Source of the DNA: Octopus bimaculoides
Lineage: Eukaryota
Assembly: GCF_001194135.2 (NCBI RefSeq)
Contig: NC_068985.1
Location: 107,509,065-107,573,064 of the forward strand
Length of the DNA: 64,000 nt
Reading direction: 5' to 3'
Shown: positions 2,261-58,157 of the stretch, piece by piece
Position numbering within the stretch: the stretch's first letter is position 1
How the letters are laid out: each line of letters opens with the position of its first letter
Program-made: the position numbers and the translations under genes
Notes under the pieces: model-generated
Told to the model about the DNA's origin: nothing
What the model saw: only the letters and a program-made list of their open reading frames with translations
Database searches by the model: none

Positions 2261-2296
2261 ATACTTACTGTGGAGAAACTTTCTGAACTTTCTATA

Positions 2297-2506
2297 CAAG
2301 GTGTCCACAAAGTCTGGGTACATGGGGATTAACACATACATTAAGAAATTATTATTTCTTATATTTAAATGTTTGTTATGATTTTATTTACTCCATGTAC
2401 CCACATGGTGATTAACACATACTTTAAGAAATTATTATTCCTTATATTTAATTGTTTATGTTATGATTTTATTTACTCCATGTACCCAGACCTTGTGGAC
2501 ACCCTG
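2297..2506. mobile_element. Tc1/mariner-type MITE with 2 internal ~85-bp units
   Basis: TIR CA(A/G)GGTGTCCACAAAGTCTGGGTACATGG at both ends, flanked by TA. Confidence 0.85.
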
Positions 2507-2684
2507 TAGTACTAGTGGTTGCCGAAATGACTGATGTCTATCGTCCTGAGGGTGTGATGTTTATAGGCTTCAATCTCCACCCCAAAGAAATACAAAAAAA
2601 AAAGTCCGAGCAAGAGTTGTCAGACAGGTTTGCGTGTAATAAAAAGTTTGATCGTCTGCAATGTTAGACATGTATGTATGTGTG

Positions 2685-3029: not shown

Positions 3030-3385
3030 TATCATCATCATCATCATCGTTTAACGTCCGCTTTCCATGCTAGCATGGGTTGGACGATTTGACTGAGGAC
3101 TGATGAAACCAGATGGCTACACCAAGCTTCAATCTGATTTGGCAGAGTTTCTACAGCTGGATGCCCTTCCTTACGTCAACCACTCCGAGAGTGTAGTGGG
3201 TGGTTTTACATGTCACCAGCACGAAAGCCAGCCAGGAGGTACTGGCAACGGCCACGTTCGAAATGGTGTATTTTACGTGCCACCTGCACAGGAGCCAGTC
3301 CAGGGGCACTGGCAACGATCTCGCTCGAATGTCTTTTCACGTGCCACTGGTACAAGTGCCAGGAAGGCGACGTTGGTAACGGTTA
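3030..3385 (-). mobile_element. SINE/short LINE-tail family B with (GAT)n tail
   Basis: ctggatgcccttcc...gcatggaaagcggacgttaaacgatgatgat. Other copies at 18395-18463, 21201-21443, 30546-30697, 31095-31370 and 37868-38230. Confidence 0.8.
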
Positions 3386-3738
3386 GGCGACGTTATCTAT
3401 CTGTGTGTGTGTGTGCGTGTGTGTGTGTGTGTGTGTGTAATCAGAAGATCCAAGGATCTAAGTGTAGGAGGTTTGTAAGCTTCGAGCAGTCTGTGATAGG
3501 TATAAAAGACAACGTTCAGAAACAACAATTTATTGGTGTCAAGTTAACTTGGGGTTCCTTAAAAGCAATATAACCTTCATATAATTAAGGTAGCTCAACC
3601 TGATGAGTAGCTGGCTGAATACCTCATTGAATGCTCAAAAGGAGAAGATAGACAGCTGACAACCATTTTTTTCTCATTGTTTACGTATTTAACTCGTTTG
3701 TTTACATATTTCATGTTATTTGCACTGTTGGTGACGTC

Positions 3739-3769
<31 letters not shown>

Positions 3770-3770
3770 A

Positions 3771-4165
3771 TCTTTTACTCTTTTACTTGTTTCAGTCGTT
3801 TGACTGTGGCCATGCTGGAGCACCGCCTTTAGTCGAGCAAATCGACCCCAGGACTTATTCTTTACAAGCCTAGTACTTATTCTATCGGTCTCTTTTGCCG
3901 AACCGCTAAGTTACGGGGACATAAACACACCAGCATCGGTTGTCAAGCGATGTTGAGGGGACAAACACAGACACACAAATACATACATATATATATATAT
4001 ACATATATACGACGGTCTTCTTTCAGTTTCCGTCTACCAAATCCACTCACAAGGCTTTGTTCGGCTCGAGGCTATAGTAGAAGACACTTGCCCAAGATGC
4101 CACGCAGTGGGACTGAACCCAGAACCATGTGGTTGGCAGCAAGCTACTTACCACACAGCTACTCC

Positions 4166-4166
<1 letters not shown>
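3771..4166 (-). mobile_element. SINE family A (tRNA-like head, internal (TA)/(TG) microsatellite, AGAGTAAA tail)
   Basis: Full-length copy. Head ggagtggctgtgtggtaag...ggttcagtccc. Confidence 0.85.
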
Positions 4167-4208
<42 letters not shown>

Positions 4209-5474: not shown

Positions 5475-5722
5475 NNNNNNNNNNNNNNNNNNNNNNNNNN
5501 NNNNNNNNNNNNNNNNNNNNNNNNNNNNNNNNNNNNNNNNNNNNNNNNNNNNNNNNNNNNNNNNNNNNNNNNNNNNNNNNNNNNNNNNNNNNNNNNNNNN
5601 NNNNNNNNNNNNNNNNNNNNNNNNNNNNNNNNNNNNNNNNNNNNNNNNNNNNNNNNNNNNNNNNNNNNNNNNNNNNNNNNNNNNNNNNNNNNNNNNNNNN
5701 NNNNNNNNNNNNNNNNNNNNNN
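5475..5722. other. Assembly gap
   Basis: N run. Others at 7959-8385, 9791-10038, 18464-19347, 22518-22680, 30791-31077, 40675-40930 and 45971-46064. Confidence 0.98.
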
Positions 5723-5794
<72 letters not shown>

Positions 5795-6699
5795 CGCAGG
5801 AGTGGTTGTGTGGTAAGTAGCTTGCTTACCAACCACATGGTTCCAGGTTCAGTCCCACTGCGTGGCACCTTGGGCAAGTGTCTTCTACTATAGCCTTGGG
5901 CCAACCAAAGCTTTGTGAATGGATTTGGTAGACGGAAACACACATACACATCTTTCACTTGTTTCAGTCATTGGATTGCAGCCATGTTGGGGGCATCGCT
6001 TTGAAGGGTTCTTTAGTCAAACAAATACACCGCAGTACTTATTTTCAAAGCCTAGTACTCATTCATTGTTCATTCTTTATTTCATGACTGATTTAAGCCT
6101 GTGGTTAATATATCAAATAACTACGTGGTTTTGAAGTTTGGATTTACAGTCTGCACCTGTCTCATGCTATTGATAATCACTATGCAGTGTTATAACCTCG
6201 ATTGAAACATCCTGTTAGCTGAGTTTATTGCATGCTTTTACTGAGGTATTCACCCAGATTTATTTAATTCCTATTTTAATTTATTATACACATACATGCA
6301 TTTCCCCTTTTCGTTTTTCTTGCTCCCCCTCTCTCACTTTCTTAGCATTCTCTTTCTTTAATCTCTCTACTTTCCTCTGTTATCTCCCTTGTACCCCCCC
6401 ACCGCCGCTCTCTATCTCTAGTTCCTTGCCCAATTCTTCAATCCCTCTGCTCCCTACCTCTCTCTGTTCCACCCACGTAACCTGTGTTTGGCCAAGCATG
6501 ATCTTTCTTTCTTGGCTTGACTGCTGATCACACAACACCTTATTTTCCTGTCTCCTGACTTTCATTTATGTTTGTTGCCATAAGGCCTCCACTTCACACG
6601 TCAGCTTAACTTTACCTGTCCTTTTAGTCAAAAGACACCTGTTGTTAGTCTTGTTGTTTGTATTTGTAATCGTGTAACATTTTCTCCATTTTCTCAGTT

Positions 6700-7886: not shown

Positions 7887-8385
7887 TCGCAGATGACTTA
7901 AACATGCACGCACACACTACCACAAAACATAGAGTGTATTGCAATAGGTTCTCCGTGGNNNNNNNNNNNNNNNNNNNNNNNNNNNNNNNNNNNNNNNNNN
8001 NNNNNNNNNNNNNNNNNNNNNNNNNNNNNNNNNNNNNNNNNNNNNNNNNNNNNNNNNNNNNNNNNNNNNNNNNNNNNNNNNNNNNNNNNNNNNNNNNNNN
8101 NNNNNNNNNNNNNNNNNNNNNNNNNNNNNNNNNNNNNNNNNNNNNNNNNNNNNNNNNNNNNNNNNNNNNNNNNNNNNNNNNNNNNNNNNNNNNNNNNNNN
8201 NNNNNNNNNNNNNNNNNNNNNNNNNNNNNNNNNNNNNNNNNNNNNNNNNNNNNNNNNNNNNNNNNNNNNNNNNNNNNNNNNNNNNNNNNNNNNNNNNNNN
8301 NNNNNNNNNNNNNNNNNNNNNNNNNNNNNNNNNNNNNNNNNNNNNNNNNNNNNNNNNNNNNNNNNNNNNNNNNNNNNNNNNNNNN

Positions 8386-8950: not shown

Positions 8951-10038
8951 AGCATATGTTGAAGAGTGTTATCACAATATAACTGATAAACTGGATCAAT
9001 ATATCAGTTAAGTAGCCTAGAGACATGTAAAAACAGAGACATTGATATGGTAACATCTGAACAACGAATGATTTAAATGTCCAGCAAATGGAATTTTGCA
9101 GGTCATGGAGATCTTAACGAGTGAATGAGTTGGGTAAGTTGAGCCAAATCAGGCAGGTGAATCAGTTGGTAGGCTGATAGGATGGTTGGTTGGTGGGTAG
9201 GCAGACACAGATTGATCGGTAAGTAGACTGACTGAGAGGCATAGGTAAGTAGTCAGGTCGGTAGGTATGTATGCATGCATGCATGTATGCATGTATGTAT
9301 GTATATATATATATCTCTATATCTATCTATCTATCTATATACGATGGGCTTCTTTCAGTTTCCATCTACCAAATCTACTCACAAGGCTTTGGTCAGCCCA
9401 AGGCTATAGTAGAAGACACTTGCCCAAGGTGCCATGCAGTAGGACTGAACCCAGAACCATGTAGTTGGTAAGTAAGCTTCTTACTACACAGCCACATCTT
9501 TTATCTTTCATCTTTTACTTGTTTCGGTAATATATATATATATATATAAATTAAAAACAAAACACAAAGTATTCCGCGGTACACGTGTTTCAAGCTTTAT
9601 AGTCTGGCATACACAGGTGCTTACAATTATCAAGTATTACCTCTAACATTTACTTTACCTATATATATATATATAAGCCAGCTGGAGGAGATGTCCTCCT
9701 GGGGCTAAAAGCAACAGTAACATCCACCCCTAGGGGTCAGCCACACTTAAGTGGCAATATACTACACTTTATATATATATAGATATATAGNNNNNNNNNN
9801 NNNNNNNNNNNNNNNNNNNNNNNNNNNNNNNNNNNNNNNNNNNNNNNNNNNNNNNNNNNNNNNNNNNNNNNNNNNNNNNNNNNNNNNNNNNNNNNNNNNN
9901 NNNNNNNNNNNNNNNNNNNNNNNNNNNNNNNNNNNNNNNNNNNNNNNNNNNNNNNNNNNNNNNNNNNNNNNNNNNNNNNNNNNNNNNNNNNNNNNNNNNN
10001 NNNNNNNNNNNNNNNNNNNNNNNNNNNNNNNNNNNNNN

Positions 10039-10441
10039 ACAGTAACATCCACCCCTAGGGGTCAGCCACACTTAAGTGGCAATATACTACACTTTATCGT
10101 GCAGTTACTGTTAATACTTCATTTAGAGAATTAACATTGCTTGTTTTCACCTTTTCAATATCAGTGAAGAATGTCACTGGAAAAGAAGATATAAGGTTTG
10201 CCAGGTTTTTGTCTCTCTCACCAAGGTCATCAGCTGTCGAACGCCGACGAAGGGAAATAACCCTGAAATCCGGATACGTTCGTGCTGCTGGTCGAGGTGA
10301 GAGGGATAACTCCCTTGGCAAACAGGACACAGTCGTGTGTCGATAAGCCAGCTGGAGGAGATGTCCTCCTGGGGCTAAAAGCAACAGTAACATCCACCCC
10401 TAGGGGTCAGCCACACTTAAGTGGCAATATACTACACTTTA
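10039..10441 (+). mobile_element. Retrozyme-like / Penelope pLTR-like unit, 345-nt period with terminal direct repeat
   Basis: acagtaacatcc...ctacacttta occurs at 10039-10096 and again at 10384-10441. The HHR lies between the two, and the right flank is (TA)n. Confidence 0.6.
10238..10282 (+). ncRNA. Minimal type I hammerhead ribozyme motif (U4C variant)
   Basis: Stem I CGAACG/CGTTCG, core CCGACGA, stem II AGGG/CCCT, GAAA, palindromic stem III ATCCGGAT. Cleavage triplet AUA, predicted cut after 10276. Confidence 0.7.
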
Positions 10442-12084
10442 TATATATATAGATATATAGATAAAGGAATAAATAATTATATGGTAAGGCTTCAACAAGT
10501 AGAATAGCACTCGATCAGCTAAGTCAGTAAAGACAATGATATGATAAAAAAGCAAATTAACAAGATTTGTGGTTTTTATTGAGTGAAGGTGTATAGATTA
10601 GCAAGACTTGTGGTTTTTATTGGGTGGAGGTGTATAGATTAGGGTGTTGGACACATGATTGTAAAATTGTGATTTTGATTCCTGGCCTGGACGATGCAGT
10701 GTGTTCTTGAGCAAAACATTTAAAGTTGAGTCCACACAGCTGGCAAAAATGAGTAACCTGTGATGGACTGGCATCCTGTCCAGGAGGGTATATGTGCACC
10801 ACAGAAACCAGGAACTGGTCCTATGAGTTGATATGACTCAAGACAGGCAGATAGGTACATTGGTGTTGACTGGACAAATGGTGAACAGAGACAGATGATA
10901 CTCCAACCTGTCTAGAGGAGCCTGTCTGCCCTATGACAGCATGGAAACAGACAGAATGAGGATGATGACAATGATAGTAGCAATGACGGTGACAATGACG
11001 ATATGTACATGTTGAGTGCATAGTTAGACATATGATGTAGAATTTGATTTAATAGTCTGATAGTTTCTGACAGAGAGGGACCGTCGGAAGATATGGACAT
11101 GAATAGACATAAAGTGTATACATTGAGTACATCCATAAACAACACAAAGCACAGATTTTGACTGAATAAAACACACACAGTATGTAGATCATGACAAAAT
11201 AGACATAAACAGTGCACAGATATCAAATGGATATATAGATGGTGTGTAGATAAACTAGTACAGTATGTAAATGTAGACTTGGTACAGAGTTACAGAATGT
11301 AGATGTTGACAGGATAATTTGACATAATGTGCAGATGTTGACAATATTGACAGGCATGGCTTGTTGACTAAATAGATGGATATAATATGTATGTGTTCAA
11401 TTGACAAACAGACAGTGTTACAGTGTGTAGACACTCATTGGAGTGACAGATGTAGTTTTCAGAAGTTGATCAGATAAACAAGTATGGCATGCAGATGTTG
11501 ACCAGACAAAAGACGCTGCATTTAGATGTTGATGGGATGCAAATATTTAATATTTGACTGGATAGATGCAGTGTACAGTTGTTGACAAGATTGATAGAAA
11601 AGTTTTGTAGATGTTGACTAGATGGACAGTCATAGGTTATAGATGTTGACCTAATATAAAATGTGTAGATGTTGACTTTTCTTGTCTTTTTAGGAATATG
11701 AAATTACTAGGAGTGGATTCTCAGTCCTCTTGCTCCCAGCCCTTTTAGTTGCCTCTTATGTCACACAGGGAATACAGCAACTGCATTCTACTGGGCCCCA
11801 CACAATCACAGCGGGGTTTGCCAGTTAACCCATAGCTAGGACCCTTACAGGTGTTACCACTCTGGGCCAGAGTAGACCCGGGAACAATAGTGGCTATGAG
11901 GTGGTTCCACACTCCTCAAAACCTTGAATCCAGGGTCCCACTACCGGATGTAGTTTATAGTCATACTCAGGACAGCACATGTTGTCGGGACCTGCTGCTG
12001 ATACTGGGGGTTGACACAATGCACCTAAGTATCTTTTATTTTTTATCTTTTGTTATTCTTTGAAAGCTGCCATAGTCAGAGTAA

Positions 12085-12520: not shown

Positions 12521-13170
12521 TGTACCTTTGTTACATATTAAACCCGGCCATCTCCCAGAAGGGACTTGTGATTTGTTTTCCTACTTACTATGTATGTGCA
12601 TATATACATGTACGTGCATGTAAGTGTGTAGGTATATTTATCTATTTATTTGTATGTATGTGTGTGTATAACTGTATATACATGCGTATATGTGTACGTG
12701 TTTATTTCCCACTTGCTTTTTCATTTTATTATATTTGTCTGCTTCAAATAAACCTGTGTTGTTAGCATTGCAAACGTCATCAATTTTATTTACAATCACC
12801 ACTTTCATCTTATCGCATTATTCTAGTGAGGGCAAACAACATTGTACCTTCCCCTCCTTCTTCTCCCTTTTCTTTCTCCATTTCTCTCCTTCTACTTCTC
12901 CCTCTGCTTCCTTCCCTTATTCTGGTCCCTATAACAACTTCATTAATATAAGCTTAGGAATATTTTCCACCATTCACTCTTCCAGCTGTAACCATGTTGG
13001 TTGAGTCATCTTACACTATTGTTCTATTTTGTGAGCAGTTCTAAGTGTTAAATTTTCTCTTTTTTCACTTGAAGGAAACGGTTTTTTCACATTATATAAC
13101 ACTTTTGTTCATCAATAAAGAACACATCAGAAACAGCTGTAATGAACCACAACGTATTTGTGTTATTACT

Positions 13171-13557
13171 CTTTTACTCTTTTACTTGTTTCAGTCATTT
13201 GACTGTGGCCATGCTGGAGCACTGCCTTTAGTCGAGCAAATCGACCCCAGGACTTATTCTTTGGAAGCCTAGTACTTATTCTATCAGTCTCTTTTGCCAA
13301 ACCGCTAAGTTACGGGGACGTAAACACACCACCATCGGTTGTCAAGCGATGTTGGGGGCACAAACACAGACACACAAACACACATACATATATATATATA
13401 CATATATACGACAGGCTTCTTTCAGTTTCCGTCTACCAAATCCACTCACAAGGCTTTGGTCGGCCCGAGGCTATAGTAGAAGACACTTGCCCGAGGTGCC
13501 ATGCAGTGGGACTGAACCCGGGACCATGTGGTTGGTAAACAAGCTACTTACCACACA
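13171..13557 (-). mobile_element. SINE family A
   Basis: Near full length. The head is cut at the perfect palindrome 13558-13636. Confidence 0.85.
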
Positions 13558-16426: not shown

Positions 16427-16665
16427 ACCCACCCTGTCAGGCTCAGAGTGGGTAGTTACTTTGATTGCAGTGAGGTGTCATGCAGGAATCTGTCTACAAT
16501 AGCTGCCAGTGTGGCTGTATGGTAAGCAGCTTGCTTCCCAACCATATGGTTTCAGGCTCAATCTCACTGTGTGGCACATTGGGCATGTGTTTTCTACTTA
16601 TAGCCTTGGGCTGTGACCAAAGCCTTGTGAATGGATTTGGTAGATGGAAACTGACAAAAAGCCTG

Positions 16666-16704
<39 letters not shown>

Positions 16705-18313: not shown

Positions 18314-19458
18314 TGTATGTAATGTATGTATGCATGTATGTGTGTATGTATTATATATGTATGTGTGTGTATGTATGTATATATATATATATATCATCAT
18401 CATCATCATCATCGTTTAACGTCCGCTTTCCATGCTAGCATGGGTTGGACGATTTGACTGAGGNNNNNNNNNNNNNNNNNNNNNNNNNNNNNNNNNNNNN
18501 NNNNNNNNNNNNNNNNNNNNNNNNNNNNNNNNNNNNNNNNNNNNNNNNNNNNNNNNNNNNNNNNNNNNNNNNNNNNNNNNNNNNNNNNNNNNNNNNNNNN
18601 NNNNNNNNNNNNNNNNNNNNNNNNNNNNNNNNNNNNNNNNNNNNNNNNNNNNNNNNNNNNNNNNNNNNNNNNNNNNNNNNNNNNNNNNNNNNNNNNNNNN
18701 NNNNNNNNNNNNNNNNNNNNNNNNNNNNNNNNNNNNNNNNNNNNNNNNNNNNNNNNNNNNNNNNNNNNNNNNNNNNNNNNNNNNNNNNNNNNNNNNNNNN
18801 NNNNNNNNNNNNNNNNNNNNNNNNNNNNNNNNNNNNNNNNNNNNNNNNNNNNNNNNNNNNNNNNNNNNNNNNNNNNNNNNNNNNNNNNNNNNNNNNNNNN
18901 NNNNNNNNNNNNNNNNNNNNNNNNNNNNNNNNNNNNNNNNNNNNNNNNNNNNNNNNNNNNNNNNNNNNNNNNNNNNNNNNNNNNNNNNNNNNNNNNNNNN
19001 NNNNNNNNNNNNNNNNNNNNNNNNNNNNNNNNNNNNNNNNNNNNNNNNNNNNNNNNNNNNNNNNNNNNNNNNNNNNNNNNNNNNNNNNNNNNNNNNNNNN
19101 NNNNNNNNNNNNNNNNNNNNNNNNNNNNNNNNNNNNNNNNNNNNNNNNNNNNNNNNNNNNNNNNNNNNNNNNNNNNNNNNNNNNNNNNNNNNNNNNNNNN
19201 NNNNNNNNNNNNNNNNNNNNNNNNNNNNNNNNNNNNNNNNNNNNNNNNNNNNNNNNNNNNNNNNNNNNNNNNNNNNNNNNNNNNNNNNNNNNNNNNNNNN
19301 NNNNNNNNNNNNNNNNNNNNNNNNNNNNNNNNNNNNNNNNNNNNNNNATCGACTACCTCTAGGACTAATTTGATAAGTGCTAATGCACAAAACTCTTGGC
19401 CCTTGAGTCACTCTGTTGCTTCTGCAAAATAATAATAACAATAACACACACACATATA

Positions 19459-20660: not shown

Positions 20661-21446
20661 CAAACACAACAAGAGCTCATATCTCAAATGGTCTATATAA
20701 AGACATGTCTTTTCTGTCCAACCATCAAATGCAGTGAAGTCTTACATCAACAGACTGTCTGGCAATATTTCATGACAGCAACTAAGCAATTCAGCATCTT
20801 TAGTTTCTCTACAATCTTCTAGAAAGTTCTCTGAATCTATTACCTCATTAATTACCTGTAAAAAATCTCTTGAAATAGTGTTACCTAGAAATTCTATATG
20901 AACGTCTCGGTCTTGTAGTTATAGCTGAATGTCAGCATTTCCATTGGTTGAATAGGACACCACATGATGATAACTGACATCTCTCAATCATTTCATTGGC
21001 TGATTTTTTTGCAAGCAAGACTTGGCATGTGATTTTGGTGATAATGTAATTGTTGTCATCTACTCCATGTCAGCCCTGATTTAGTAGTATAATGTAAGAG
21101 ATCCAAACAGGACTATCCCATCATTTATTCAGATATAGTGTACCTAAGACTACATCATCCAATGTGTGCTTCTTTCTTTTAAATATAGTATGGTGTAAGA
21201 TCATCATCATCATCATCATCGTCGTTTAACGTCCGCTTTCAATGCTAGCATGGGTTGGACGATTTGACTGAGGACTGGTGAAACCGGATGGCAACACCAG
21301 GCTCCAATCCAATTTGGCAGAGTTTCTACAGCTGGATGCCCTTCCTAACGCCAACCACTCAGAGAGTGTAGTGGGTGCTTTTACGTGTCACCCGCACGAA
21401 AACGGCCACGCTTGAAATGGTGTCTTTTATGTGCCACCCGCAGATA

Positions 21447-22292: not shown

Positions 22293-22299
22293 ATATATA

Positions 22300-22846
22300 T
22301 CTTTTACTCTTTTACTTGTTTCAGTCTTTTGACTGTGGCCATGCTGGAGTACCGCCTTTAGTCAAGCAAATCGACCCCAGGACTTATTCTTTACAAGCCT
22401 AGTACTTATTCTATCGGTCTATTTTGCCGAACCGCTAAGTTACGGGGACATAAACACACCAACATCGGTTGTCAAGCGATGTTGGGAGGACAGACACACA
22501 AACACATACATATATATNNNNNNNNNNNNNNNNNNNNNNNNNNNNNNNNNNNNNNNNNNNNNNNNNNNNNNNNNNNNNNNNNNNNNNNNNNNNNNNNNNN
22601 NNNNNNNNNNNNNNNNNNNNNNNNNNNNNNNNNNNNNNNNNNNNNNNNNNNNNNNNNNNNNNNNNNNNNNNNNNNNNNNNATATACATATATACGACGGG
22701 CTTCTTTCAGTTTCTGTCTACCAAATCCACTCACAAAGCTTTGGTCGGCCCGAGGCTATAGTAGAAGGCACTTGCCCAAGGTGCTACACAGTGGGACTAA
22801 ACCCGGGACCATGTGGTTGGTAAGCAAGCTACTTACCACACAGCCA
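22300..22846 (-). mobile_element. SINE family A spanning an N-gap
   Basis: Same consensus on both sides of the gap. Confidence 0.8.
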
Positions 22847-24007
22847 CTAACCAAACATCTCTGACATTAGCCTGTGGTGCATATGCTAGTCTAATTTAAA
22901 AGTCTAATTTTCATGTCAAAAATTGCTTCAGAATATTTAAGCCCAGAGATCCAATTTTCAGTGGAAATATTTTTCATATGACAGCTGGAATTGATGTACC
23001 TAGAGCAGGAATATCGGCAGAGTTTCAAACATCAACTCACAGCCTTGGATTGAACTTGAATTATTATGTTCAGATGCAAAAATAACTGTAAACACCAAAA
23101 GAGGATTTTGTCAGGGAATGATGCTGGATGCAAGTAGTAAACCATTCAAGTCCTTGATAGAAATATTGATTTCAAATTTTGGCACAAGGCCAGCAATTTT
23201 GAAGGAGGAAGTAAGTTGACTACATCAACTCCAGTGCTCAACTGGTACTTATTTCATCAGCCCCAAAAGGATGAAAGACAAAGTTAACCTCAATGGAATT
23301 TGAACTCAGACCATAAAGTTAGACAAAATGCTGCTAAGCATTTTGCCCGATGTGCTAATGATTCTGCCTGCCTGCCACTTTCACCGTGGCAAAAATATTA
23401 AGGACTGACTGGTGAAAATACAATAAATCTAGCAGATGCTTAACTCATTAGAATCCCATTGTGAATAATATATTGGAATGTCATTAATGATTTTGTTTTA
23501 GGTGCCCTGTATTTGACAGCCCATTAGGTATATGTAGATGGTTTGTTTGGTAACTGACCAGTGGCTGTGATACAGCTTAAAGTCAACTTGCAGCAGGAGC
23601 TTATGCCACTCAATTTTAGCTTATTATCCACTATCATTGTTGATGTACAGACCTCTCACAGACACACATAAACAGATTTACATCATGTAAAATATCTCTA
23701 TTCTTTCATTATTGCAACAAAAGTATTTCTTTTGTAAAAGATAAATTAAAATTTTTGTATTTGAATTTTTTTTTTTCTTCTCTCAACAAACCAAATATTT
23801 ATTTCAACATTATATGCCTCCAGCCAATATTTGATCAGACAATTTCATCTCTCAACTTCTGCACGAGGAAATTATTCTTGTCACAACTAACAATTATGTT
23901 TTAATATATAAAAAAACATTCCAGCCTTTATTTTTATTTCTTGATTCATACATAATGTATTTAACAATTGTATATATTATATAGTAGTATATATATTGTA
24001 TAGTAGT

Positions 24008-29965: not shown

Positions 29966-30716
29966 TGTTAGACAAAGACAAAGCTGAGAATAGAAGAGAC
30001 AACGAAAGTTCTACTTAATTTGATTATAAAAATTATTATTAAAGGGTTGGGACTCAGAGAGGATGGTCTGCAGATTATTACTGATAATAATCCTAATTGT
30101 GAGTGTAACATAAAAATTACAAGAGGAGCTTACAATGAGCTCAGTTCCTATACTGATCTATACAAAGAGATGATGCATCGTAAACAACAAACAACTTCTT
30201 CACTCCCCAAAAGTGATGTTCATGATAATGAGCTATAAGGTATTGTTCCTCATCCTCCAAGTCACACTCGTTCCATCACCCCACCTCACACTGTAGTCAA
30301 CACCTCTGATAAGAACATATGCTTCAATACTGCGATTCTTATCAAATCCCTGACTTATTCTTCTTGAGATGTCTTTGTATTTTTATATATCTGTATTGTA
30401 CTGTGTGTTTAGAAGTGGTTATTTTCATGTGTAAAGGCAATTGTGTTGCTTGTCCTTTGTTGTTTTCTTGTGCTCTTTTTACAGCCAAATTTTCAGGAAT
30501 GCATAACTTCCATAAAGCAAGGGATTCCTGTATGTATACATATACATCATCATCATCATCGTTTAATGTCCGCTTTCCATGCTAGCATGGGTTGGGCAAT
30601 TTGACTGAGGACTGATGAGCCAGATGGCTACACCAGGCTCCAATCTGATTTGGCAGAGTTTCTACAGTTGGATGCTCTTCCTAATGCCAACCACTCCGTA
30701 TATATATGTATATATA

Positions 30717-30764
<48 letters not shown>

Positions 30765-31827
30765 TATATATACTCCGTATACATATATATNNNNNNNNNN
30801 NNNNNNNNNNNNNNNNNNNNNNNNNNNNNNNNNNNNNNNNNNNNNNNNNNNNNNNNNNNNNNNNNNNNNNNNNNNNNNNNNNNNNNNNNNNNNNNNNNNN
30901 NNNNNNNNNNNNNNNNNNNNNNNNNNNNNNNNNNNNNNNNNNNNNNNNNNNNNNNNNNNNNNNNNNNNNNNNNNNNNNNNNNNNNNNNNNNNNNNNNNNN
31001 NNNNNNNNNNNNNNNNNNNNNNNNNNNNNNNNNNNNNNNNNNNNNNNNNNNNNNNNNNNNNNNNNNNNNNNNNNNNNATATATATATATATAAATGGCCA
31101 CACACCCTGGTGAAGAGGATTGGTCTGCAAGAGTCATGTGCTGGTGTCACACAGAAGACACTTGTGCCAGTGCCATGTAAAAATGCTTGTGTGGTGCCAT
31201 ATTAAAAGCACCCAGCACACACTGTAAAGTGGTTGGCATTAGGAAGGGCATCCACCCATAGAAACCATGCCAAATCAGACTAGAACCTGGTGCAGTTCTC
31301 CGGTTTGCTGGCTCTGGTCGAACTGTCCAACCCATGCCAGCATGGAAGACAGACATTAAAGATGATGATGTAGAATAAATTTTCCAACTTGAGGGCAGTA
31401 ATTAAAGATTTCACCTTTTAAGTTCAAGAAGTCACCTGGACCATGAAAGGTTTTTAGAATTATTCTCCTCTCAGCTAAGCAAAGTCTACACTAACTGCTT
31501 CTGTTCAGGTATGTCTCAGGTTCCTGCAGCTTTCAGTTAGTTTTTTATTGTGTTCCTTCGTCTTTTATTCACCATATTTATAGGCGGCTAATGCTCCACC
31601 TCTCTTGGACTCATGACAAACGAGAAACTCCTGCCTAGTGAGTCTGTAGTCTTGAGACAGACTTTTTTTGCATACATAGGTGTGTGTGTGTGTGTGTATG
31701 CATGTGTGTGTGTGGGTGCAAATAAAAAAAATATATGTATAACATATACATATATGGTATCATCATCATCATCATAGCCATCTTCCTCCTCATCATCATT
31801 ATCATTGTCATCGTCATCATCATTGTC

Positions 31828-37569: not shown

Positions 37570-38650
37570 TCTCACAAAATCCTATGTTGCACCAGCAAGA
37601 TCACGGCCTTACATTGACTAAAAGGGGAAGTAAAGCGAAACCCACCATCTATTATATGTGATACAGATTTTGCTGATGGCATAGCTTCTTTATCAAATAC
37701 TATTGATGAAATTCAAGAACTTTTTCTCTGCCAAGAAAATTGTTCTACACATAAGTGTTGCCAAGACAGAGTACTTGTCACTCAACCAAGAAGATGGAAA
37801 TCTTATCACACTGGATGGTGGAATACTAAACTGAGTTGATGACTTTTCTATATTTGGGCAACTGGATGATGATGATGATCATCATCATTGTCGTTTAACA
37901 TCCGCTTTCCATGCTAGCATGGGTTGGATGATTTGACTGAGGAATGGTGGACCAGGAGGTGACACCAGGCTCCAATCTGATTTGGCAGAGTTTCTACAGC
38001 TGGATGCCCTTCCTAATGCCAACCACTCCGAGAGTGTAGTGGGTGCTTTTACGTGCCACAGGCACGAGGGCCAGTCAGGTGGGTACTGGCAACGGCCATG
38101 CTCGAAATGGTGTAGTTTACGTGCCACCTGCACAGGAGCCAGTCAAGGGACGGCACTGGCAATGATCTCGCTCGAATGTCTTTACACGTGCCACTGGCAC
38201 AAGTGCCAGTTAGGCGACGTTGGTAAGGTAGGCGACATAAGTTCATCAAAAAAAGACATTGACATTAGAATTACTGAAGCCTGGGCTGCAATGAACAAAA
38301 CAGAAAAGATATGGAAGTCAGATTTATGCAGAAAAATCAAAATATTCTTCAGCACATCCATCCATTGAGTCAGTGTTGTTGTATGGATCAGGTACATGGC
38401 CCCTGACACAAACACACGAGAAGAAACTAGATGTTGCATACACTAAAATGCTTAGGGTTGTAGAAAACATAAACTGGTGTCAATGTATTACAAACGAAAT
38501 TTTATATGGAAACTTGCTCAAGATAACAACTATAATTGTTTAAAGGTAATTATGATTTGCAGGACATTGCTGGAGAAGTAAGCAGGAAGTTATACACAGG
38601 ACACTATTGTGGGAACTGATTCACAAGAAACGCAGTAGAAGAAGACCTAT
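37570..38650 (+). mobile_element. Decayed RTE LINE interrupted by a SINE-B copy
   Basis: FADGIASLSNTIDEIQEL before the SINE and SSKKDIDIRITEAWAAMNKTEKIWKS after it. Confidence 0.8.
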
Positions 38651-38799
38651 TGGGTTCAATGTAATCGACTTGCCAGCCTTGTACATATATATATTTATAT
38701 GTATGTATTCTATATACATATACATGCTTTGATAAGTGCTAATGTACGAAACTCCGCCTTTGACGTGCTCTGCTGATTATTTATAAAAAAATATGCATA

Positions 38800-38964
38800 G
38801 ACGTAGGAGTGGCTGTGTGGTAAGTAGCTTGCTTACCAACCACATGGTTCCGGGTTCAGTCCCACTGCGTGGCACCTTGGGCAAGTGTCTTCTATTATAG
38901 CCTCGGGCCGACCAAAGCCTTGTGAGTGGATTTGGTAGACGGAAACTGAAAGAAGCTCGTCGTA

Positions 38965-39034
<70 letters not shown>

Positions 39035-39240
39035 TGTTCTGTATTTGTCTCCCCAACATCGTTTGACAACCGATGGTGGTGTGTTTACGTCGCCGTCACT
39101 TAGCGGTTCGGCAAAAGAGACCGATAGAATAAGTACTAGGCTTACATAGAATAAGTCCTGGGGTCGATTTGCTCGACTAAAGGCGGTGCTCCAGCATGGC
39201 CACAGTCAAATGACTGAAACAAGTAAAAGAGTAAAGAGTA
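38800..39240 (+). mobile_element. SINE family A
   Basis: Full length. Partial copies also at 5792-5940, 9330-9495, 16500-16660, 39880-40200 and 51575-51715. Confidence 0.85.
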
Positions 39241-40290
39241 TACTCATCTTTTGAGTTCTATTTTTTTGCATCACCAAACCCTATGCATTATATATTTGTG
39301 TGTAGCTATATGGTAATCTATGACCCTGTATACGATGTGAATGCTTTTTTTTTTTTCATGTTAATTTGGAAATAACCATCTGAGTAAGCCGTGACAGAAA
39401 AATGAACAAAAGCGATATCGAAGGAGGTGAAGCTATATTTAATCGTCCGTTAGAAACGTGACATAAAAATCTAGTATCTCTTACAGGCCAGAGTTTTGTT
39501 CCTCTTCCATTCAACATCATATTTAAAAAATGTCGCGCATCAATCCGCTAGAGACGACAAAATAGGATTGATTGTCATATTTAAGTGCATTTTCATGGAA
39601 AATATATTGTAGAGTTATCTCCCTTAGATCGTCTACCATGTATGCACAATCTTTTTCCAGAACAGGACACGCCTCATAGTTAAGCGGGTTGCACAGCGAA
39701 AAAATGTAATGTTATGTTAAGCATGACATTCAGAAAGTCCCGTGGGCCGCAGTTTGTTCATGATTGTGAAATATCACGCATAATTTAACCGAAAGAAGTC
39801 TTGAGTCCTAACTAATAGGCGTAATGCTTTAGGTGCACATATGTGTGTGATATTTTGCCTAACTATACAAAACAAGAGATATACGGGTTCAGTCCCATTG
39901 CGCGGCACCCTGGGTAAGTGTCTTCTACCAAGATCCGGGCTTAGAAATGCCGTGTGAGTGAATTTAGTTGAGTAACAACGGTGCGGAAGCCGGTCGTGTA
40001 TAGGTGTGTGTGTGTGTGTGTGTGTGTTTCTCGCTCGCTCTTGTCGCTTAACCATCACTGTTTATGTCCCCGTAACATAGCGGTTGGCAATATAGACAAA
40101 TAGAATATATAGCAGACTTTAAAAAAAATAAGTACTGGGGTCCATCTGTTCGACTAAGACTAAGCCTCCCAAGCCGGTGACTCGGGGCACCGCCTTCAGG
40201 GATTTGATCGAACACACACACACATCCGAAAAAGCCCACTCTAAAGCATTAAGCGCAGAAATATATTTTCCAGCCAGTTAAACGTGTAGT

Positions 40291-40340: not shown

Positions 40341-41154
40341 GGGGACTTCACCACCGGAATCCTCTCGAGTTGTACATGCGTAGTAAAACTCGTACTTAAG
40401 CAGTTAGTATCAATTTCTCGGTGAGTTGAGCTCAGACCTTCTACATGACAACACCTCGCTCCTCCACGAAGCACTTTTACACTGTTCTCTGGCAGGCATC
40501 AAGGAAGACCTTAACCTTCCATTACCAAACCACAACCCAATCAGCGGCTGCTAAGCTGTATGACAGGAATTGTATAACCAAGTATCATCATAAATAAACC
40601 TTTTTATTATGTTGTTAATTGTTCTGATGTCTCTTCATTCAAAATGCTGTAAAAGGCGATAGAGAGAGACTAAANNNNNNNNNNNNNNNNNNNNNNNNNN
40701 NNNNNNNNNNNNNNNNNNNNNNNNNNNNNNNNNNNNNNNNNNNNNNNNNNNNNNNNNNNNNNNNNNNNNNNNNNNNNNNNNNNNNNNNNNNNNNNNNNNN
40801 NNNNNNNNNNNNNNNNNNNNNNNNNNNNNNNNNNNNNNNNNNNNNNNNNNNNNNNNNNNNNNNNNNNNNNNNNNNNNNNNNNNNNNNNNNNNNNNNNNNN
40901 NNNNNNNNNNNNNNNNNNNNNNNNNNNNNNACACGCATTTAATTTCTCTGTCCTGTCCTGATTATATCTCACTTGAAAAAAAGAAAAAAAAAGAAAATAC
41001 ATACGAGAAGGTCGGTAATTTTTTTTTTTTTTCCTGCAAGCAGTACAAATAACTCACACTCACACAAACAGGAGAAAAAAACAAAAACAAACACCATTGT
41101 TTTTTTGTTTTACGAAAATTTTTTTTCTCTCTCTTTCTCCTATGCACACATGAT

Positions 41155-44950: not shown

Positions 44951-47900
44951 CTTTTGAATGATTATAAACCATGGATTATAAATAAACCTATTGTTTTATG
45001 AATATTATTATTCACAATAAATATTAGGTATTAAACCAGTAATTCATTGGATGATACCATCCCTTAATGAGCCTAATTTAACCTCTAATTAAATATATAT
45101 ATGTGTGTTATAGTGATAGTGTATATCATTAGATACACCATATAAAATATATATACACTATATAAGTATATTGGTATGCTATATGCATGTAATATTTGTA
45201 GTATAATGTTGGTGGTGCAGTGTTAGCAGAATTTAGTGTTATGGTGGTATATGGCAGTGTCTTCACATTTTTATGAAGATAACAGGGAGGGGGAAGTAAA
45301 AGAGAAGAAAATAACAGAAAAATGACAAACAGAGAAAGTGTTTAATATTGGAAATATGACTTTATTATTTTTTTTTCTGTGATTGTTGTCAGAATTATGG
45401 AAACTGATGATGATACTGACAGTTGTGGCCACTGTTAACAGCAGCAAGTACTTCCAGAGTAAGCATGCTGCATACAGTGACCCTTTTAGTTAACAGAACT
45501 ACTACCCCAGGTAGGTGTCTATTTTATTGTACAACACACACACATACACACATATGGAGAGAAAGAGAGAGACACACAAAGACAGGTGTATATACATGCC
45601 CACATAGAGAGCTTGAGTGGTATGCACAGAGACAGGTGGACAAATGCTTGTAGAAAGAGACAAAGACAGAAAGATAGAAAAATAGATAAACACATGCATA
45701 CACACACATACATATATACAGAGAGACTAGCAGAAAGATGAACAAGAACACAGAAAAAAGATGTTAAATTACTGCTGAACTGCTATTGACCAAAGTATGA
45801 CTAAGAGTTTTATTTTTATATTATATAGCAGTTAGTTGACATATATAGTGTTAGGACAAGAAACAAAGGAGGACATTCATTACTGCATATAGAAATCTGA
45901 AGACAAAAATATATAAATGCGACATATGATTACTAAAAATGCTTTTTTACTCTCTTTTTGGATGGATTTCNNNNNNNNNNNNNNNNNNNNNNNNNNNNNN
46001 NNNNNNNNNNNNNNNNNNNNNNNNNNNNNNNNNNNNNNNNNNNNNNNNNNNNNNNNNNNNNNNNCAGTGTCCTACTATATGGCTCTTGGCACTGGCTACT
46101 TAAAGAAAAAAAGTGAATACCGAGTTCCACAAGGCACAGGTCATAGAAGCCATAACTTTAAATTAATTTAGATGCATGTGTCATTGTTGAAAAAAAAAAA
46201 ATACCTCAATCTAATTCCAAAATTCAACGAAGATCAGCTCTCTCACTGAAAGGTAATATTTGTGCCTGGAGAATTATATAAAATAACATCCACACTCACA
46301 AATATATATGTATGAATTTTTCTGCAGTGAATGCTGGAGGCGATTTTGATAGTATTACAGAATCTGGTTAATTGCCTAGCATAATAATATCAGCCAATAT
46401 TCTGATACATGTATGTTTTATAAAACTTAAAATACTAGTAGCATTAGCTCTAACTGGACACAAGCTGGGGCTTGATTAACCCCAGCTGGGTTGCCTGGGG
46501 AAGGGCACCTGATGTTGAAATAAACTTGAAACACCGAATGACCCCCAAGAAACATTACTAATAATGTGTCCAGGTGCATCACAGGAAAAATTACACACAC
46601 ACACACAACTTACACATACACACAATTAAACCAGAAAACTGCTTTTGACTGACTTATTGGGTATGAATTATAAATTCACTGAAGGATATTATCCTACCCA
46701 GTTGTGGTAGCAGGCATTAAGTACTACATTAAAGAGATGACACAGAACCACATCTGAGACAAACTATTGAATGATATAACCATATCTCCATTTATCAATT
46801 TAAGTTCATGACTCACTAGAAAGTGAATGAAAATGACATACACTATATTGTGAGCAGCGTCTATGAATCTTTAAAGCTAATTCCTTAATTCAAGCCAACA
46901 CATACACACACACACACACACACAATTTTTGTAAGGAAAAGGTTGACTGTGACAGTTGTCAAAGAGTTTGATGGCTGTTTGTAAACCAAAATTTCAAAGT
47001 CAGTCAACTTCTTCCTTGTAAAACTTAGTAAAAAGTATGGAGTGATCCTTTAATGTTAAATTGTTTTTATATATAATTAAACAAACAAATATATATAATT
47101 ATCTTTACTCTCTTAACTATACTACTTATTGGACTTCGTACCACTCATATTATATACACACACATCTACACCTTGCATAGTTTTGATATTGGAAGTCTCC
47201 CTTATTATAAGCTTATAGAATTGTCTAGCTCTAGGTCTAACTCTGGAATGGAGGGATCATTGAATAGAAAGGAGTCAGTGAGAGAACTGTTCCTCAAAGA
47301 AGTATTCATTGGAAATTCATTTAATGTAACTTAACAACAGTGAAATCTGTCCTGCACATAAGAGACACCACTGCTGCTCAAAAAGCAACTCAGTTAAACA
47401 CACTGTCAAAAAAAAAAATAGTTTAAACATGAAGCAGATAGTTATTTGCCAGTAGTTAAGAATAGGTTACATATCAGGAGACAAAAGTATTTGGATAATA
47501 ATAATCTGGAGTCAGTGTTGATCACGTGATTAGAGATAGTGTGAATCTGAAGAAAGAAAAGCAAGCCACAAATGTGAAGTTAATGAATATGAGAGCAGCG
47601 TGCATGAGTGAATTCAACAGAAGAAGTATGAAGCATTAGCCTAGTTATATTTCCTCTCCTTATGGTGGGGCTAGAACAGCATTAATTCCTGCCAAAACTG
47701 GTGTATGTGTTGGTGTGTGTGTGTGTCCATTCTTGGAATGTGTTCTGATCTGATGTAAATTATTCTATTTTGAGATCCCTGCCACATCATTAAGCTGACA
47801 ATAGGAGATAGTCAACGCAGGTAGAATCAACAACATGGACTGTGTGAATTTTCACCATGTGAATTGTTGGGTAGAAGTAGTCCAAGACTTCTCCATCATG

Positions 47901-52679: not shown

Positions 52680-53025
52680 ACCGTTCAAGCGTGATCATTA
52701 CCAGCGTCGCCTTCCTGGCACATGAAAAGTCATTCGAGCGAGATCATTGCCAGTGCCACTGGACTAGCTCCTGTGCAGGTGGCACATAAAATACACCATT
52801 TTGAGCGTGGCCATTGCCAGTACCGCCTGACTGGCCTTTGTGCGGGTGACATGTAAAAGCACCCACTACACTCTCGGAGTGGTTGGCATTAGGAAGGGCA
52901 TCCAGCTGTAGAAACTCTGCCAAATCAGATTGGAGCCTGGTATAGCCATCTGGTTCACCAGTCCTCAGTCAAATCGTCCAACCCATGCTAGCATGGAAAG
53001 CGGACGTTAAACGATGATGATGATA
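52680..53025 (+). mobile_element. Family B copy in the last FAM107 intron
   Basis: Same consensus. Further copies at 54915-55140 (-), 58968-59260 (-) and 62025-62300 (+). Confidence 0.8.
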
Positions 53026-56724: not shown

Positions 56725-56935
56725 TTCTCTTTACTCTTTTACTTGTTTCAGTCATTTGACTGCGGCCATGCTGGAGCACCACTTTTTAGTCGAGCAAATT
56801 GACCCCAGGACTTATTCTTTGGAAGCCTAGTACTTATACTATTGGTTTCTTTTGCCGAACCGCTAAGTTACGGGAATGTAAACACACCGCCATTGGTTGT
56901 CAAGCGATGTTGGGGAGACAAACACGGACACACAA

Positions 56936-56966
<31 letters not shown>

Positions 56967-57137
56967 CATATATACGATGGGCTTCTTTCAGTTTCCGTCT
57001 ACCAAATCCACTCACAAGGCTTTGGTCGGCCCGAGGCTATAATAGAAGACACTTGCCCAAGGTGCCACGCAGTGGGACTGAACCCGGACCCATGTGGTTG
57101 GTAAACAAGCTACTTACCACACAGCCACTCCTGCGCC
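56725..57137 (-). mobile_element. SINE family A in a FAM107 intron
   Basis: Full length. Confidence 0.85.
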
Positions 57138-57618: not shown

Positions 57619-58157
57619 CTGTGTAACAATAACAGCAATGACATTTTAGGCAACGAGATAACATTTATAAAGAAGAAAAACAAAAAGATATCTCTATAAC
57701 AGTTTGAAAGTAGAAATTGTGGAATAATATAACCACAAAGATAAATAAAGTTTTGGTGTAATTTTTATTATTTATCTAACCCATGCCAGCATGGAAGACA
57801 GACATTAAATGATGATGATGATTCAATGTCTTTAGTTCCACTTTTCCATGCTTGCATGGGTCACACAATAACTTTGATGAAGTGTATTTTTCTATGATTG
57901 AATGCTCTTCCCGTTGCTAACCCTCATCTGTTTCTTTAAGTCTATCTAGCTAACAACAAATACCTGGACATGCTTTTACAGAGAAATCTTAACAAGTGAC
58001 ACCGTTTGTATGAATGGTGACTTCTTGTTTACAATCAGGTGCAGGCATGATTGAGTGGTTAAGAAGTTTGCATACCCAACCACATGACATTTTGGGCACA
58101 GGTTGGAAACAAACCACATTGCTTATATGACAGTGATGCTCATTTGTAATTATTGTA

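What the first reader, a model, noticed from the sequence alone, without database searches (positions are those of the whole stretch)
10039..10441. Retrozyme-like 345-nt unit with a minimal type I hammerhead ribozyme
Seen in sequence: a direct repeat at 10039 and 10384 defines a 345-nt period. The full terminal repeat appears to be 98 nt (10343-10440), next to (TA)n. Between the repeats lies CGAACG-CCGACGA-AGGG(AAATAA)CCCT-GAAA-TCCGGA-TA-CGTTCG, with a perfect 6-bp stem I extendable by CAGC/GCTG, a 4-bp stem II, a palindromic ATCCGGAT stem III and an AUA triplet. The repeat itself is rich in hairpins (GGAGGA/TCCTCC, CCCCTAGGGG, CACTTAAGTG). Established knowledge: metazoan non-LTR retrozymes and Penelope pLTRs are short tandem units carrying minimal type I HHRs with palindromic stem III that cleave as dimers and yield circular RNAs. 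Inference: this is a cephalopod retrozyme family. The core has C instead of U at position 4, which is either a family-wide variant or an inactivating mutation.
Basis: partly seen in the sequence, partly recalled or inferred. Interest (0 to 1): 0.85.

Follow-up and report, generated by a model that had tools for sequence, protein, structure and literature searches.

The report
Octopus retrozyme-like repeat, variant hammerhead
A 345-base repeated, non-coding unit in an octopus genome carries a hammerhead-ribozyme-shaped motif and looks like one more member of the known animal "retrozyme" class of small mobile elements. This copy has a changed catalytic core, so it may cut poorly or not at all.

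Summary
A 59-nt exact direct repeat (10039/10384) gives a 345-nt period, and the repeat is about 100 nt (10343-10442). The hammerhead-like motif is exactly as described (10238-10282, predicted cut after 10276).

On its own the motif is only marginal:
- No Rfam hammerhead model reports it, even at E<=10.
- Markov simulations give about 0.04-0.17 such motifs per 61-kb window.
- A covariance model built from three validated retrozyme hammerheads ranks it first in the window, at 14.9 bits and E~0.07.

The context makes chance unlikely:
- The motif sits at the tip of a roughly 50-bp hairpin in a very structured 345-nt unit (z -7 to -8).
- The unit is non-coding, has 45.5% GC, and lies in a (TA)n tract.
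- The unit size and helix III shape match the mussel retrozyme.

An Octopus bimaculoides protein model translates a slightly different copy, so the family has at least two copies.

Verdict: probably a cephalopod non-LTR retrozyme-type element, a new member of a known kind. The hammerhead architecture is canonical rather than "minimal". It carries C4 and A10.1-U11.1 in place of the consensus bases, so this copy is probably attenuated or dead.

The parts
9660..9675 (.). (TA)8 microsatellite, left flank and probable target site
9673..9772 (+). Repeat copy R1 (about 100 nt), 100% identical to 10343-10442
   Evidence: (D5, D6)
9773..9790 (.). 18 nt of TA-rich sequence identical to the downstream flank 10443-10460. 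It is either a second haplotype carrying a solo R, or a mis-extension at the contig end.
   Evidence: (D5)
9791..10038 (.). Scaffold gap of 248 N. The spacing fits a missing internal segment: 286 nt are needed for an R-I-R-I-R layout and 266 nt are available.
   Evidence: the arithmetic is inference
10039..10097 (+). Repeat copy R2, 3' 59 nt only, cut by the gap
   Evidence: D6
10098..10342 (+). Internal segment I (245 nt), non-coding. I plus R makes the 345-nt unit.
10196..10325 (+). Long imperfect hairpin of about 50 bp whose tip is the hammerhead-like domain (MFE -63.8 kcal/mol, z -5.5)
10238..10282 (+). Type I hammerhead-like motif. Stem I is 10238-43 / 10277-82. Core is C3 C4(!) G5 A6 C7 G8 A9, 10244-50. 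Stem II is A10.1GGG / CCCU11.1, 10251-54 / 10261-64, with loop AAAUAA. G12A13A14 is 10265-67. Helix III is A15.1U / AU16.1 with a CCGG loop, 10268-75. A17 is 10276.
10276..10277 (+). Predicted self-cleavage site (after A17, triplet AUA)
   Evidence: sequence plus the hammerhead numbering convention; not tested
10343..10442 (+). Repeat copy R3 (about 100 nt) with three small hairpins
10443..10463 (.). TA-rich right flank (TATATATAGATATATAGATA), the other side of the (TA)n target

Best explanation
This is a short tandem insertion of a non-autonomous, non-coding 345-nt retroelement of the metazoan non-LTR retrozyme type, in an octopus genome. It holds 1.28 units for certain and probably 2.28 with one unit lost in the gap. 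It sits in a (TA)n microsatellite.

Inferred life cycle, taken from the published family and not shown here:
1. Multimeric + strand transcripts are cut by the type I hammerhead after A17 (10276).
2. This gives 345-nt monomers with 5'-OH and 2',3'-cyclic phosphate ends.
3. A host RtcB-type tRNA ligase circularises them into a highly base-paired circular RNA.
4. A Penelope-like element's reverse transcriptase and GIY-YIG endonuclease copy the RNA back into (TA)n sites. That produces arrays longer than one unit with arbitrary end points. The roughly 100-nt 'terminal repeat' is simply this overhang.

This particular copy carries C instead of U at core position 4 and A-U instead of G-C at 10.1/11.1. 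Its most stable local fold pairs C3-C4-G5 with the CGG of helix III. It is therefore probably a weak or dead ribozyme as a monomer. Any residual activity would be helped by the double-hammerhead form, in which the palindrome AUCCGGAU of two units makes an 8-bp helix III.
For: Shown here:
- A 345-nt period with three identical R copies.
- The only hammerhead-shaped site in 64 kb on both strands.
- The top hit in the window for a covariance model built from the coral, mussel and axolotl retrozyme hammerheads that were cleavage-tested in PMC7229834: 14.9 bits, E~0.07, full-length, all 12 pairs standard.
- Helix III is 2 bp plus a palindromic tetraloop, as in mussel Mg353 (C-GCGC-G) and axolotl Ax353 (C-ACGU-G).
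- Stem I continues into a roughly 50-bp hairpin.
- The unit folds far better than shuffles: z -8.0 linear and -7.0 circular, 63% paired.
- GC is 45.5%.
- No coding signal was found, no tRNA-like part and no terminal inverted repeats.
- Both outer junctions lie in (TA)n, with 3-5 nt of microhomology (ATAA / TTTAT).
- A second, slightly different copy is translated in O. bimaculoides protein A0A0L8IHK6: 3 substitutions and a 1-nt indel over 161 nt. One substitution turns a stem I A-U into G-U.
- Two hammerhead domains cofold at -53.9 kcal/mol with the intermolecular 8-bp helix III, against 2 x -24.5 for the monomers.

From the literature:
- Features of the class, and mussel units of 350-390 bp (PMC7229834).
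- Penelope-like elements prefer (TA)n targets (PMC8557442).
- Retrozymes derive from pLTRs of Penelope-like elements (bioRxiv 10.64898/2026.07.22.740005).
- U4C is a known natural viroid variant. It cleaves poorly in vitro but still works in vivo (PMC3088659).
- The giant squid genome has 235 Rfam Hammerhead_1 hits (PMC6962438).
Against: - No Rfam hammerhead model reports the site, at gathering score or at E<=10, even on a 91-nt slice.
- The motif alone is expected by chance about 0.04-0.17 times per window, and my own model gives only E~0.07.
- Two of the most conserved features deviate, U4 and G10.1-C11.1. Single mutants in the CUGA turn have low activity (PMC9901934).
- The hammerhead conformer is 7.8 kcal/mol above the MFE of the domain.
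- Only one intact motif is visible in the locus, and there is no other copy in the 64-kb window.
- There is no sequence similarity to mussel or coral retrozymes.
- No expression, circularity or cleavage data exist, and no Penelope-like RT is seen in the window.
- Copy number rests on a single protein model, which could be an orthologue if the window comes from another octopus species.
Confidence: 0.68

Rival explanations
1. The hammerhead likeness is a coincidence. The locus is an unrelated structured repeat, such as a local tandem duplication or an unclassified non-autonomous element built around a long hairpin. The loop of that hairpin merely resembles a hammerhead core with one mismatch.
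For: - Rfam is negative.
- One-mismatch motifs of this quality arise about once per 27 windows in Markov sequence.
- My covariance model gives only E~0.07.
- The core and the 10.1/11.1 pair are non-consensus.
- The hairpin supplies stem I for free.
- The validated mussel unit is not unusually structured (z +0.2), so strong folding is not diagnostic of retrozymes.
Against: - The motif must fall in one specific 33-nt hairpin loop with the correct order, spacing and helix sizes. My rough estimate is 1e-7 to 1e-6 per hairpin (inference).
- Helix III has the same 2-bp plus palindromic-tetraloop form as validated retrozyme ribozymes.
- Unit length, GC content, lack of coding capacity and the (TA)n target all fit the class.
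Confidence: 0.2
2. The locus is a heavily 5'-truncated tandem remnant of an autonomous Penelope-like element, that is, its 3' end or pseudo-LTR with its ribozyme. It would not be an independent retrozyme family.
For: - Penelope-like elements insert as partial tandems that form pLTRs, carry hammerheads in them, are often 5'-truncated and favour (TA)n (PMC8557442).
- Retrozymes and pLTRs are sequence relatives.
Against: - Hammerheads of Penelope-like elements are usually minimal, lacking helix III and loop contacts (PMC6155905; PMC7229834). This motif has canonical helix sizes.
- No RT or endonuclease remnant is seen in the long ORFs of the window.
- The whole unit is 345 nt, within the retrozyme size range.
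Confidence: 0.1
3. The 345-nt periodicity is an assembly artefact: two haplotypes, or a collapsed repeat, stitched around the scaffold gap.
For: - The 118 nt before the gap repeat 10343-10460 exactly, including 18 nt of non-repeat flank.
- The gap sits inside the element.
Against: - The R(59 nt)-I-R stretch with both junctions (10097|10098 and 10342|10343) lies in one uninterrupted contig, 10039-10460. At least 1.17 units are therefore real.
- The other seven gaps show no duplicated flanks.
- The artefact could change only the number of units (solo R, 1.28 or 2.28).
Confidence: 0.02

Closest known systems
Mytilus galloprovincialis non-LTR retrozyme (Rtz Mg353; Cervera & de la Pena 2020, PMC7229834)
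   Same: - The host is also a mollusc.
- Unit size matches: 350-390 bp against 345 bp.
- The unit is non-coding with low GC.
- The type I hammerhead has a 4-bp helix II and a helix III of 2 bp capped by a palindromic tetraloop (GCGC against CCGG).
- Helix I is 6 bp.
   Different: - No primary-sequence similarity outside the motif.
- The mussel core is consensus CUGAUGA with G10.1-C11.1. The octopus core has C4 and A10.1-U11.1.
- The mussel element has about 5000 copies and proven circular RNAs. Here at least 2 copies are seen and there are no RNA data.
- The octopus unit is far more self-paired (z -8 against about 0).
Amphibian satellite 2 / axolotl retrozymes (HHR_Amex1 and HHR_Amex2)
   Same: - Units of 330-350 bp.
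- A weak helix III with a palindromic loop, which allows a double hammerhead.
- Amex2 also lacks a G10.1-C11.1 pair (U.U mismatch) and cleaves weakly as a monomer but well as a dimer.
   Different: - Vertebrate host.
- About 1e5 copies in long arrays.
- Consensus U4.
- Cleavage and circular RNAs are demonstrated.
Penelope-like element pLTR hammerheads
   Same: - Type I topology.
- Tandem arrangement.
- Bias for (TA)n insertion sites.
- The presumed source of the retrotransposition machinery.
   Different: - These hammerheads are minimal, with helix III absent and no loop contacts.
- They are attached to a 3-4 kb element that encodes RT and GIY-YIG. Nothing of that kind is seen here.
PLMVd hammerhead U4C natural variant (Ambros & Flores 1998, cited in PMC3088659)
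   Same: The same core substitution (U4 to C). It reduces cleavage in vitro but is tolerated in vivo.
   Different: - It is a plant viroid with a type III hammerhead, stabilised by loop-loop contacts.
- There is no genomic DNA copy.

Membership tests
Hammerhead ribozyme, type I | Three helices around a junction, with helix I open-ended, in the order I-core-II-GAAA-III-UH-I | tested here: met
   A descriptor scan finds it as the only site in the window. It aligns full-length to the covariance model with all 12 pairs standard.
Hammerhead ribozyme, type I | Conserved core C3-U4-G5-A6-N7-G8-A9 | tested here: not met
   The sequence is CCGACGA, with C at position 4 (10245). U4C is a documented low-activity natural variant (PMC3088659).
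Hammerhead ribozyme, type I | G12-A13-A14, an A15.1-U16.1 pair, and H17 at the cleavage site | tested here: met
   GAA at 10265-67, A15.1 at 10268 paired with U16.1 at 10275, and A17 at 10276.
Hammerhead ribozyme, type I | G10.1-C11.1 at the base of helix II (quasi-conserved) | tested here: not met
   A10251-U10264. Active natural exceptions exist: U.U in axolotl Amex2 and in PMC3088659.
Hammerhead ribozyme, type I | Reaches the Rfam covariance-model threshold (RF00163 and related models) | tested here: not met
   No hit at gathering score. No hit at E<=10 on 1 kb or on 91 nt.
Hammerhead ribozyme, type I | Site-specific self-cleavage | not testable with these tools
   This needs in vitro transcription of monomer and dimer constructs.
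Metazoan non-LTR retrozyme | Head-to-tail repeats of a 150-450 bp unit | tested here: met
   The period is 345 nt. A stretch of 1.17 units is contiguous, and a third R copy upstream of the gap fits 2.28 units.
Metazoan non-LTR retrozyme | Each unit carries a type I hammerhead | tested here: inconclusive
   One hammerhead-shaped motif with a variant core sits in the only complete unit. A second unit, if it exists, is hidden in the gap.
Metazoan non-LTR retrozyme | No LTR, PBS, PPT or coding capacity; GC below 50% | tested here: met
   - GC is 45.5%.
- No Pfam domain.
- No protein relatives apart from a spurious 54-aa model.
- No tRNA-like part or terminal inverted repeats.
- PBS and PPT were not searched for specifically.
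Metazoan non-LTR retrozyme | A multicopy family in the genome | tested here: inconclusive
   One further, non-identical copy is inferred from O. bimaculoides protein A0A0L8IHK6. There is none elsewhere in the window. No octopus genome was available to search.
Metazoan non-LTR retrozyme | Target-site duplications longer than 4 bp, when present | tested here: inconclusive
   Both flanks are (TA)n, so a duplication cannot be delimited.
Metazoan non-LTR retrozyme | Expressed as unit-length linear and circular RNA | not testable with these tools
   No transcriptome was accessible. The predicted circle is very stable.
Penelope-like element (pLTR) | RT plus GIY-YIG ORF between the pseudo-LTRs | tested here: not met
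   Only 245 nt of non-coding sequence lies between the repeats. No RT was found in the long ORFs of the window.

The most novel reading that the evidence does not exclude
C4 is not a lesion of this copy but the family-wide core of an active cephalopod hammerhead. That would make it a natural genomic U4C / A10.1-U11.1 variant. It would cleave mainly as a double hammerhead through the 8-bp AUCCGGAU helix III and yield an unusually rod-like 345-nt circular RNA in octopus tissues.
Probability: 0.1. Interest if true: 0.55.

Novelty: new member of a known kind. Interest (0 to 1): 0.35.

Why it matters
If it is real, it extends non-LTR retrozymes to cephalopods. These are small circular-RNA-producing mobile elements, already known from corals, mussels, insects and amphibians. 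In the papers I could search, cephalopods have only bulk Rfam hammerhead counts (giant squid) and no characterised element. It would also give a concrete unit with which to probe octopus RNA for abundant ribozyme-derived circular RNAs. For ribozyme biology, a family built on a C4 core would be a rare natural core variant. More probably this is simply a decayed copy, and the finding is then routine repeat annotation.

Tried and rejected
- Rfam cmscan gave no hammerhead or other ribozyme on the whole window at gathering score, or on 1 kb and 91 nt at E<=10.
- I tried to find more copies through translated ORFs.
  - The 99-aa minus-frame ORF gave one hit, P0001.
  - Its DNA, and that of the window ORFs, is not on record.
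  - The 95-aa plus-frame segment found nothing against 1.84 billion representative proteins.
  - Two concatenated multi-frame queries failed. They pulled in about 8000 word candidates, none scored, and even P0001 was not recovered, so these runs are uninformative.
- Exact-pattern scans of viral, metagenome (twice) and prokaryote genome contigs gave 0 matches. This was expected, because none of these collections holds cephalopod genomes.
- The base at position 4 in the second copy cannot be read from P0001. It is a synonymous third codon position (TCG or TCA, both Ser).
- MITE or Tc1-like element with a TA duplication: rejected, because there are no terminal inverted repeats.
- SINE: rejected, because there is no tRNA-like head.
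- General gap-flank duplication artefact: rejected.
- Homology to mussel or coral retrozymes: none.
- MAFFT misaligned the fourth validated ribozyme (axolotl Ax330), so I left it out of the model.

Full report
**1. What is in the sequence**

Reading 9600-10900 with the repeat finder gives this layout:
- (TA)8 at 9660-9675
- a repeat R of about 100 nt at 9673-9772
- 18 nt of TA-rich sequence to 9790
- a scaffold gap of 248 N at 9791-10038
- the last 59 nt of R at 10039-10097
- a 245-nt internal segment I at 10098-10342
- a full R at 10343-10442
- TA-rich flank from 10443

9673-9790 equals 10343-10460 over 118 nt at 100% identity, and that stretch includes 18 nt of the downstream flank.

No other copy of the unit exists in the 64-kb window; only (TA)n matches appear. 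Of the eight gaps in the window, this is the only one with duplicated flanks. The duplication is therefore a consequence of the repeat and not a general habit of the assembly.

The stretch 10039-10460 is uninterrupted, so R(part)-I-R with both junctions is real.

If the locus is R-I-R-I-R, 286 nt are needed between the end of the first R and position 10039. The assembly leaves 266. The gap estimate therefore fits a 2.28-unit array with one internal segment unassembled (inference). The alternative is a heterozygous solo-R allele placed in series.

**2. The hammerhead-like motif**

The string is exactly as reported:
- stem I CGAACG/CGTTCG
- CCGACGA
- AGGG-AAATAA-CCCT
- GAAA
- TCCGGA
- T-A, with the predicted cut after 10276

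A type I descriptor of my own allowed up to 1 core mismatch and required stem I >=5, stem II >=3 and stem III >=2. It finds this site and no other on either strand, and no site with a consensus core.

In 546 first-order Markov windows the same descriptor fired 95 times. Twenty of those hits were as good as the observed one. That is 0.17 and 0.037 per window. A one-mismatch motif is therefore not remarkable genome-wide.

Rfam gives nothing, at gathering score or at E<=10 on 1 kb or on 91 nt.

For an independent yardstick I took the coral, mussel and axolotl Ax353 retrozyme ribozymes from the supplement of Cervera & de la Pena 2020. Their cleavage was shown experimentally. I aligned them, annotated the three helices and built a covariance model.
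- With filters off, the octopus site is the best hit in the window: 10236-10284, 14.9 bits, E~0.07, full model length, no non-standard pair.
- The runner-up scores 11.2 bits at E 0.85.

This is suggestive but not conclusive.

**3. Architecture**

The motif is not the minimal Penelope type.
- Helix I is 6 bp up to an internal loop (UGU/U) and then continues.
- Helix II is 4 bp with a 6-nt loop.
- Helix III is A-U and U-A closed by CCGG. The mussel ribozyme (C-GCGC-G) and axolotl Ax353 (C-ACGU-G) have the same '2 bp plus palindromic tetraloop' form. The paper calls this form typical of invertebrates.

There are two deviations from the consensus.
- C replaces U at position 4 (10245).
- A-U replaces G-C at 10.1/11.1.

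Comprehensive mutagenesis finds low activity for all single mutants of the CUGA turn (PMC9901934). Even so, U4C is one of the few natural variants known to keep biological function, in a viroid (PMC3088659). The axolotl Amex2 ribozyme works, mainly as a dimer, with a U.U mismatch at 10.1/11.1.

Thermodynamically, the hammerhead conformer of the 71-nt domain is -16.7 kcal/mol, against an MFE of -24.5. The MFE fold pairs C3-C4-G5 with the CGG of helix III. With U4 restored, the competing fold is 2.2 kcal/mol weaker.

Two domains cofold at -53.9 kcal/mol with the intermolecular 8-bp AUCCGGAU helix. A double hammerhead is therefore plausible.

**4. Context**

- Stem I runs on into a roughly 50-bp imperfect hairpin at 10196-10325 (-63.8 kcal/mol, z -5.5).
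- The whole unit folds at -128.8 kcal/mol (z -8.0). The minus strand gives -122.3 (z -6.2). The cleaved-and-circularised monomer gives -123.4 (z -7.0, 63% paired).
- GC is 45.5%.
- The unit has no coding signal. There is no Pfam domain, and a 95-aa frame finds nothing among 1.84 billion representative proteins.
- It has no tRNA-like part and no terminal inverted repeats.
- Both outer junctions fall in (TA)n, with 3-5 nt of microhomology (ATAA......TTTAT). Penelope-like elements, the presumed mobilisers of animal retrozymes, favour (TA)n targets (PMC8557442; bioRxiv 10.64898/2026.07.22.740005).

For one given 345-nt unit the chance expectation of such a motif is about 2e-4 to 1e-3. For it to sit precisely in the loop of a pre-existing hairpin, I estimate 1e-7 to 1e-6 (inference). 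The conjunction of motif and context is what carries the argument, not the motif score.

**5. Host and copy number**

The 99-aa minus-strand ORF of the unit hits a single database protein, UniRef A0A0L8IHK6 from Octopus bimaculoides (54 aa).
- tblastn shows that its first 28 residues follow one frame of the unit (10393-10307) and its last 26 follow another (10310-10233).
- It was therefore translated from a copy with a 1-nt insertion.
- That copy also has three substitutions: 10240 A>G, 10289 T>A and 10291 G>A.
  - One turns a stem I A-U into G-U.
  - One turns a distal G.U into A-U.
  - One breaks a distal pair.

The window is thus from an octopus, and at least one further, roughly 97% similar copy exists. 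That copy is a paralogue, or an orthologue if the species differs.

Position 4 is a synonymous third base in that frame, so the question of C4 against U4 stays open. The DNA of that copy could not be retrieved. No collection available here holds cephalopod genomes, and pattern scans were empty.

**6. Comparison with what is known**

The published features of metazoan non-LTR retrozymes (PMC7229834) are:
- 150-450 bp tandem units
- a type I hammerhead
- no LTR, PBS or PPT
- GC below 50%
- longer target-site duplications
- self-paired circular RNAs of 170-400 nt

Mussel units are 350-390 bp. The octopus unit meets the structural criteria that I could test. Copy number and target-site duplication are inconclusive, and expression is untestable here.

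It shares no primary sequence with mussel or coral units, which agrees with the statement that these repeats are species-specific.

In the searchable literature I found no description of a cephalopod retrozyme. I found only a count of 235 Rfam Hammerhead_1 hits in the giant squid genome (PMC6962438).

**7. Verdict**

- The 'minimal' label is wrong.
- The dimer requirement does not hold for invertebrate retrozymes.
- The role given to the terminal repeat is better explained as the array overhang.
- The gap was not noticed.
- The second core-adjacent deviation (A10.1-U11.1) was missed.

Most likely (about 0.7) this is a short array of a cephalopod retrozyme-type element whose ribozyme in this copy is attenuated or dead.
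- A chance resemblance inside an unrelated structured repeat remains possible (about 0.2).
- A truncated tail of a Penelope-like element is a minor variant of the same biology (about 0.1).

It is a new member of a known kind and of modest interest. It would become more interesting only if C4 proves to be the family consensus of an active ribozyme.

Noticed in passing
window 3766-4188, 13167-13557, 22293-22848, 38783-39242, 56730-57132, 60839-61225 (also 9302-9495, 5788-5939, 16499-16696): A dispersed repeat family of about 400 bp, with 10 or more copies at 80-94% identity in both orientations. It is probably an abundant octopus SINE-like element. One copy ends about 180 nt upstream of the retrozyme-like locus.
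   Followed up: partly
window 3031-3391, 21206-21442, 30545-30698, 37875-38236, 52716-53024, 62023-62301: A second dispersed repeat family of about 360 bp at 81-93% identity. Its spurious ORFs share the peptide '...LQLDALPNANHSESVVG...'. It has no Pfam domain.
   Followed up: partly
window 2293-2508 and 58156-58708 (opposite orientation): An 85-bp tandem satellite, present as two arrays 56 kb apart in inverted orientation, with 91-95% identity between units.
   Followed up: no
window 10556-10637: A tandem duplication of a 41-nt unit (90% identity), about 100 nt downstream of the element. It overlaps a weak SNORD121A-like Rfam match at 10524-10582 (19.8 bits, gathering score 44, E 1.1), which is probably chance.
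   Followed up: no
window 11000-11680: A degenerate minisatellite with a 32-nt period and the recurring core ATGTAGATGTTGAC, in about 10 copies.
   Followed up: no
window 10302-10315: A second small hairpin, AGGGATAACTCCCT, closely resembles the stem II hairpin AGGGAAATAACCCT (10251-10264). In the MFE fold it is instead part of the long stem. Its meaning is unknown.
   Followed up: no
window 5475-5722, 7959-8385, 9791-10038, 18464-19347, 22518-22680, 30791-31077, 40675-40930, 45971-46064: Eight N gaps totalling 2607 N, several of them next to TA or CA microsatellites. This is a short-read draft scaffold. Two gaps have the identical length of 248.
   Followed up: partly
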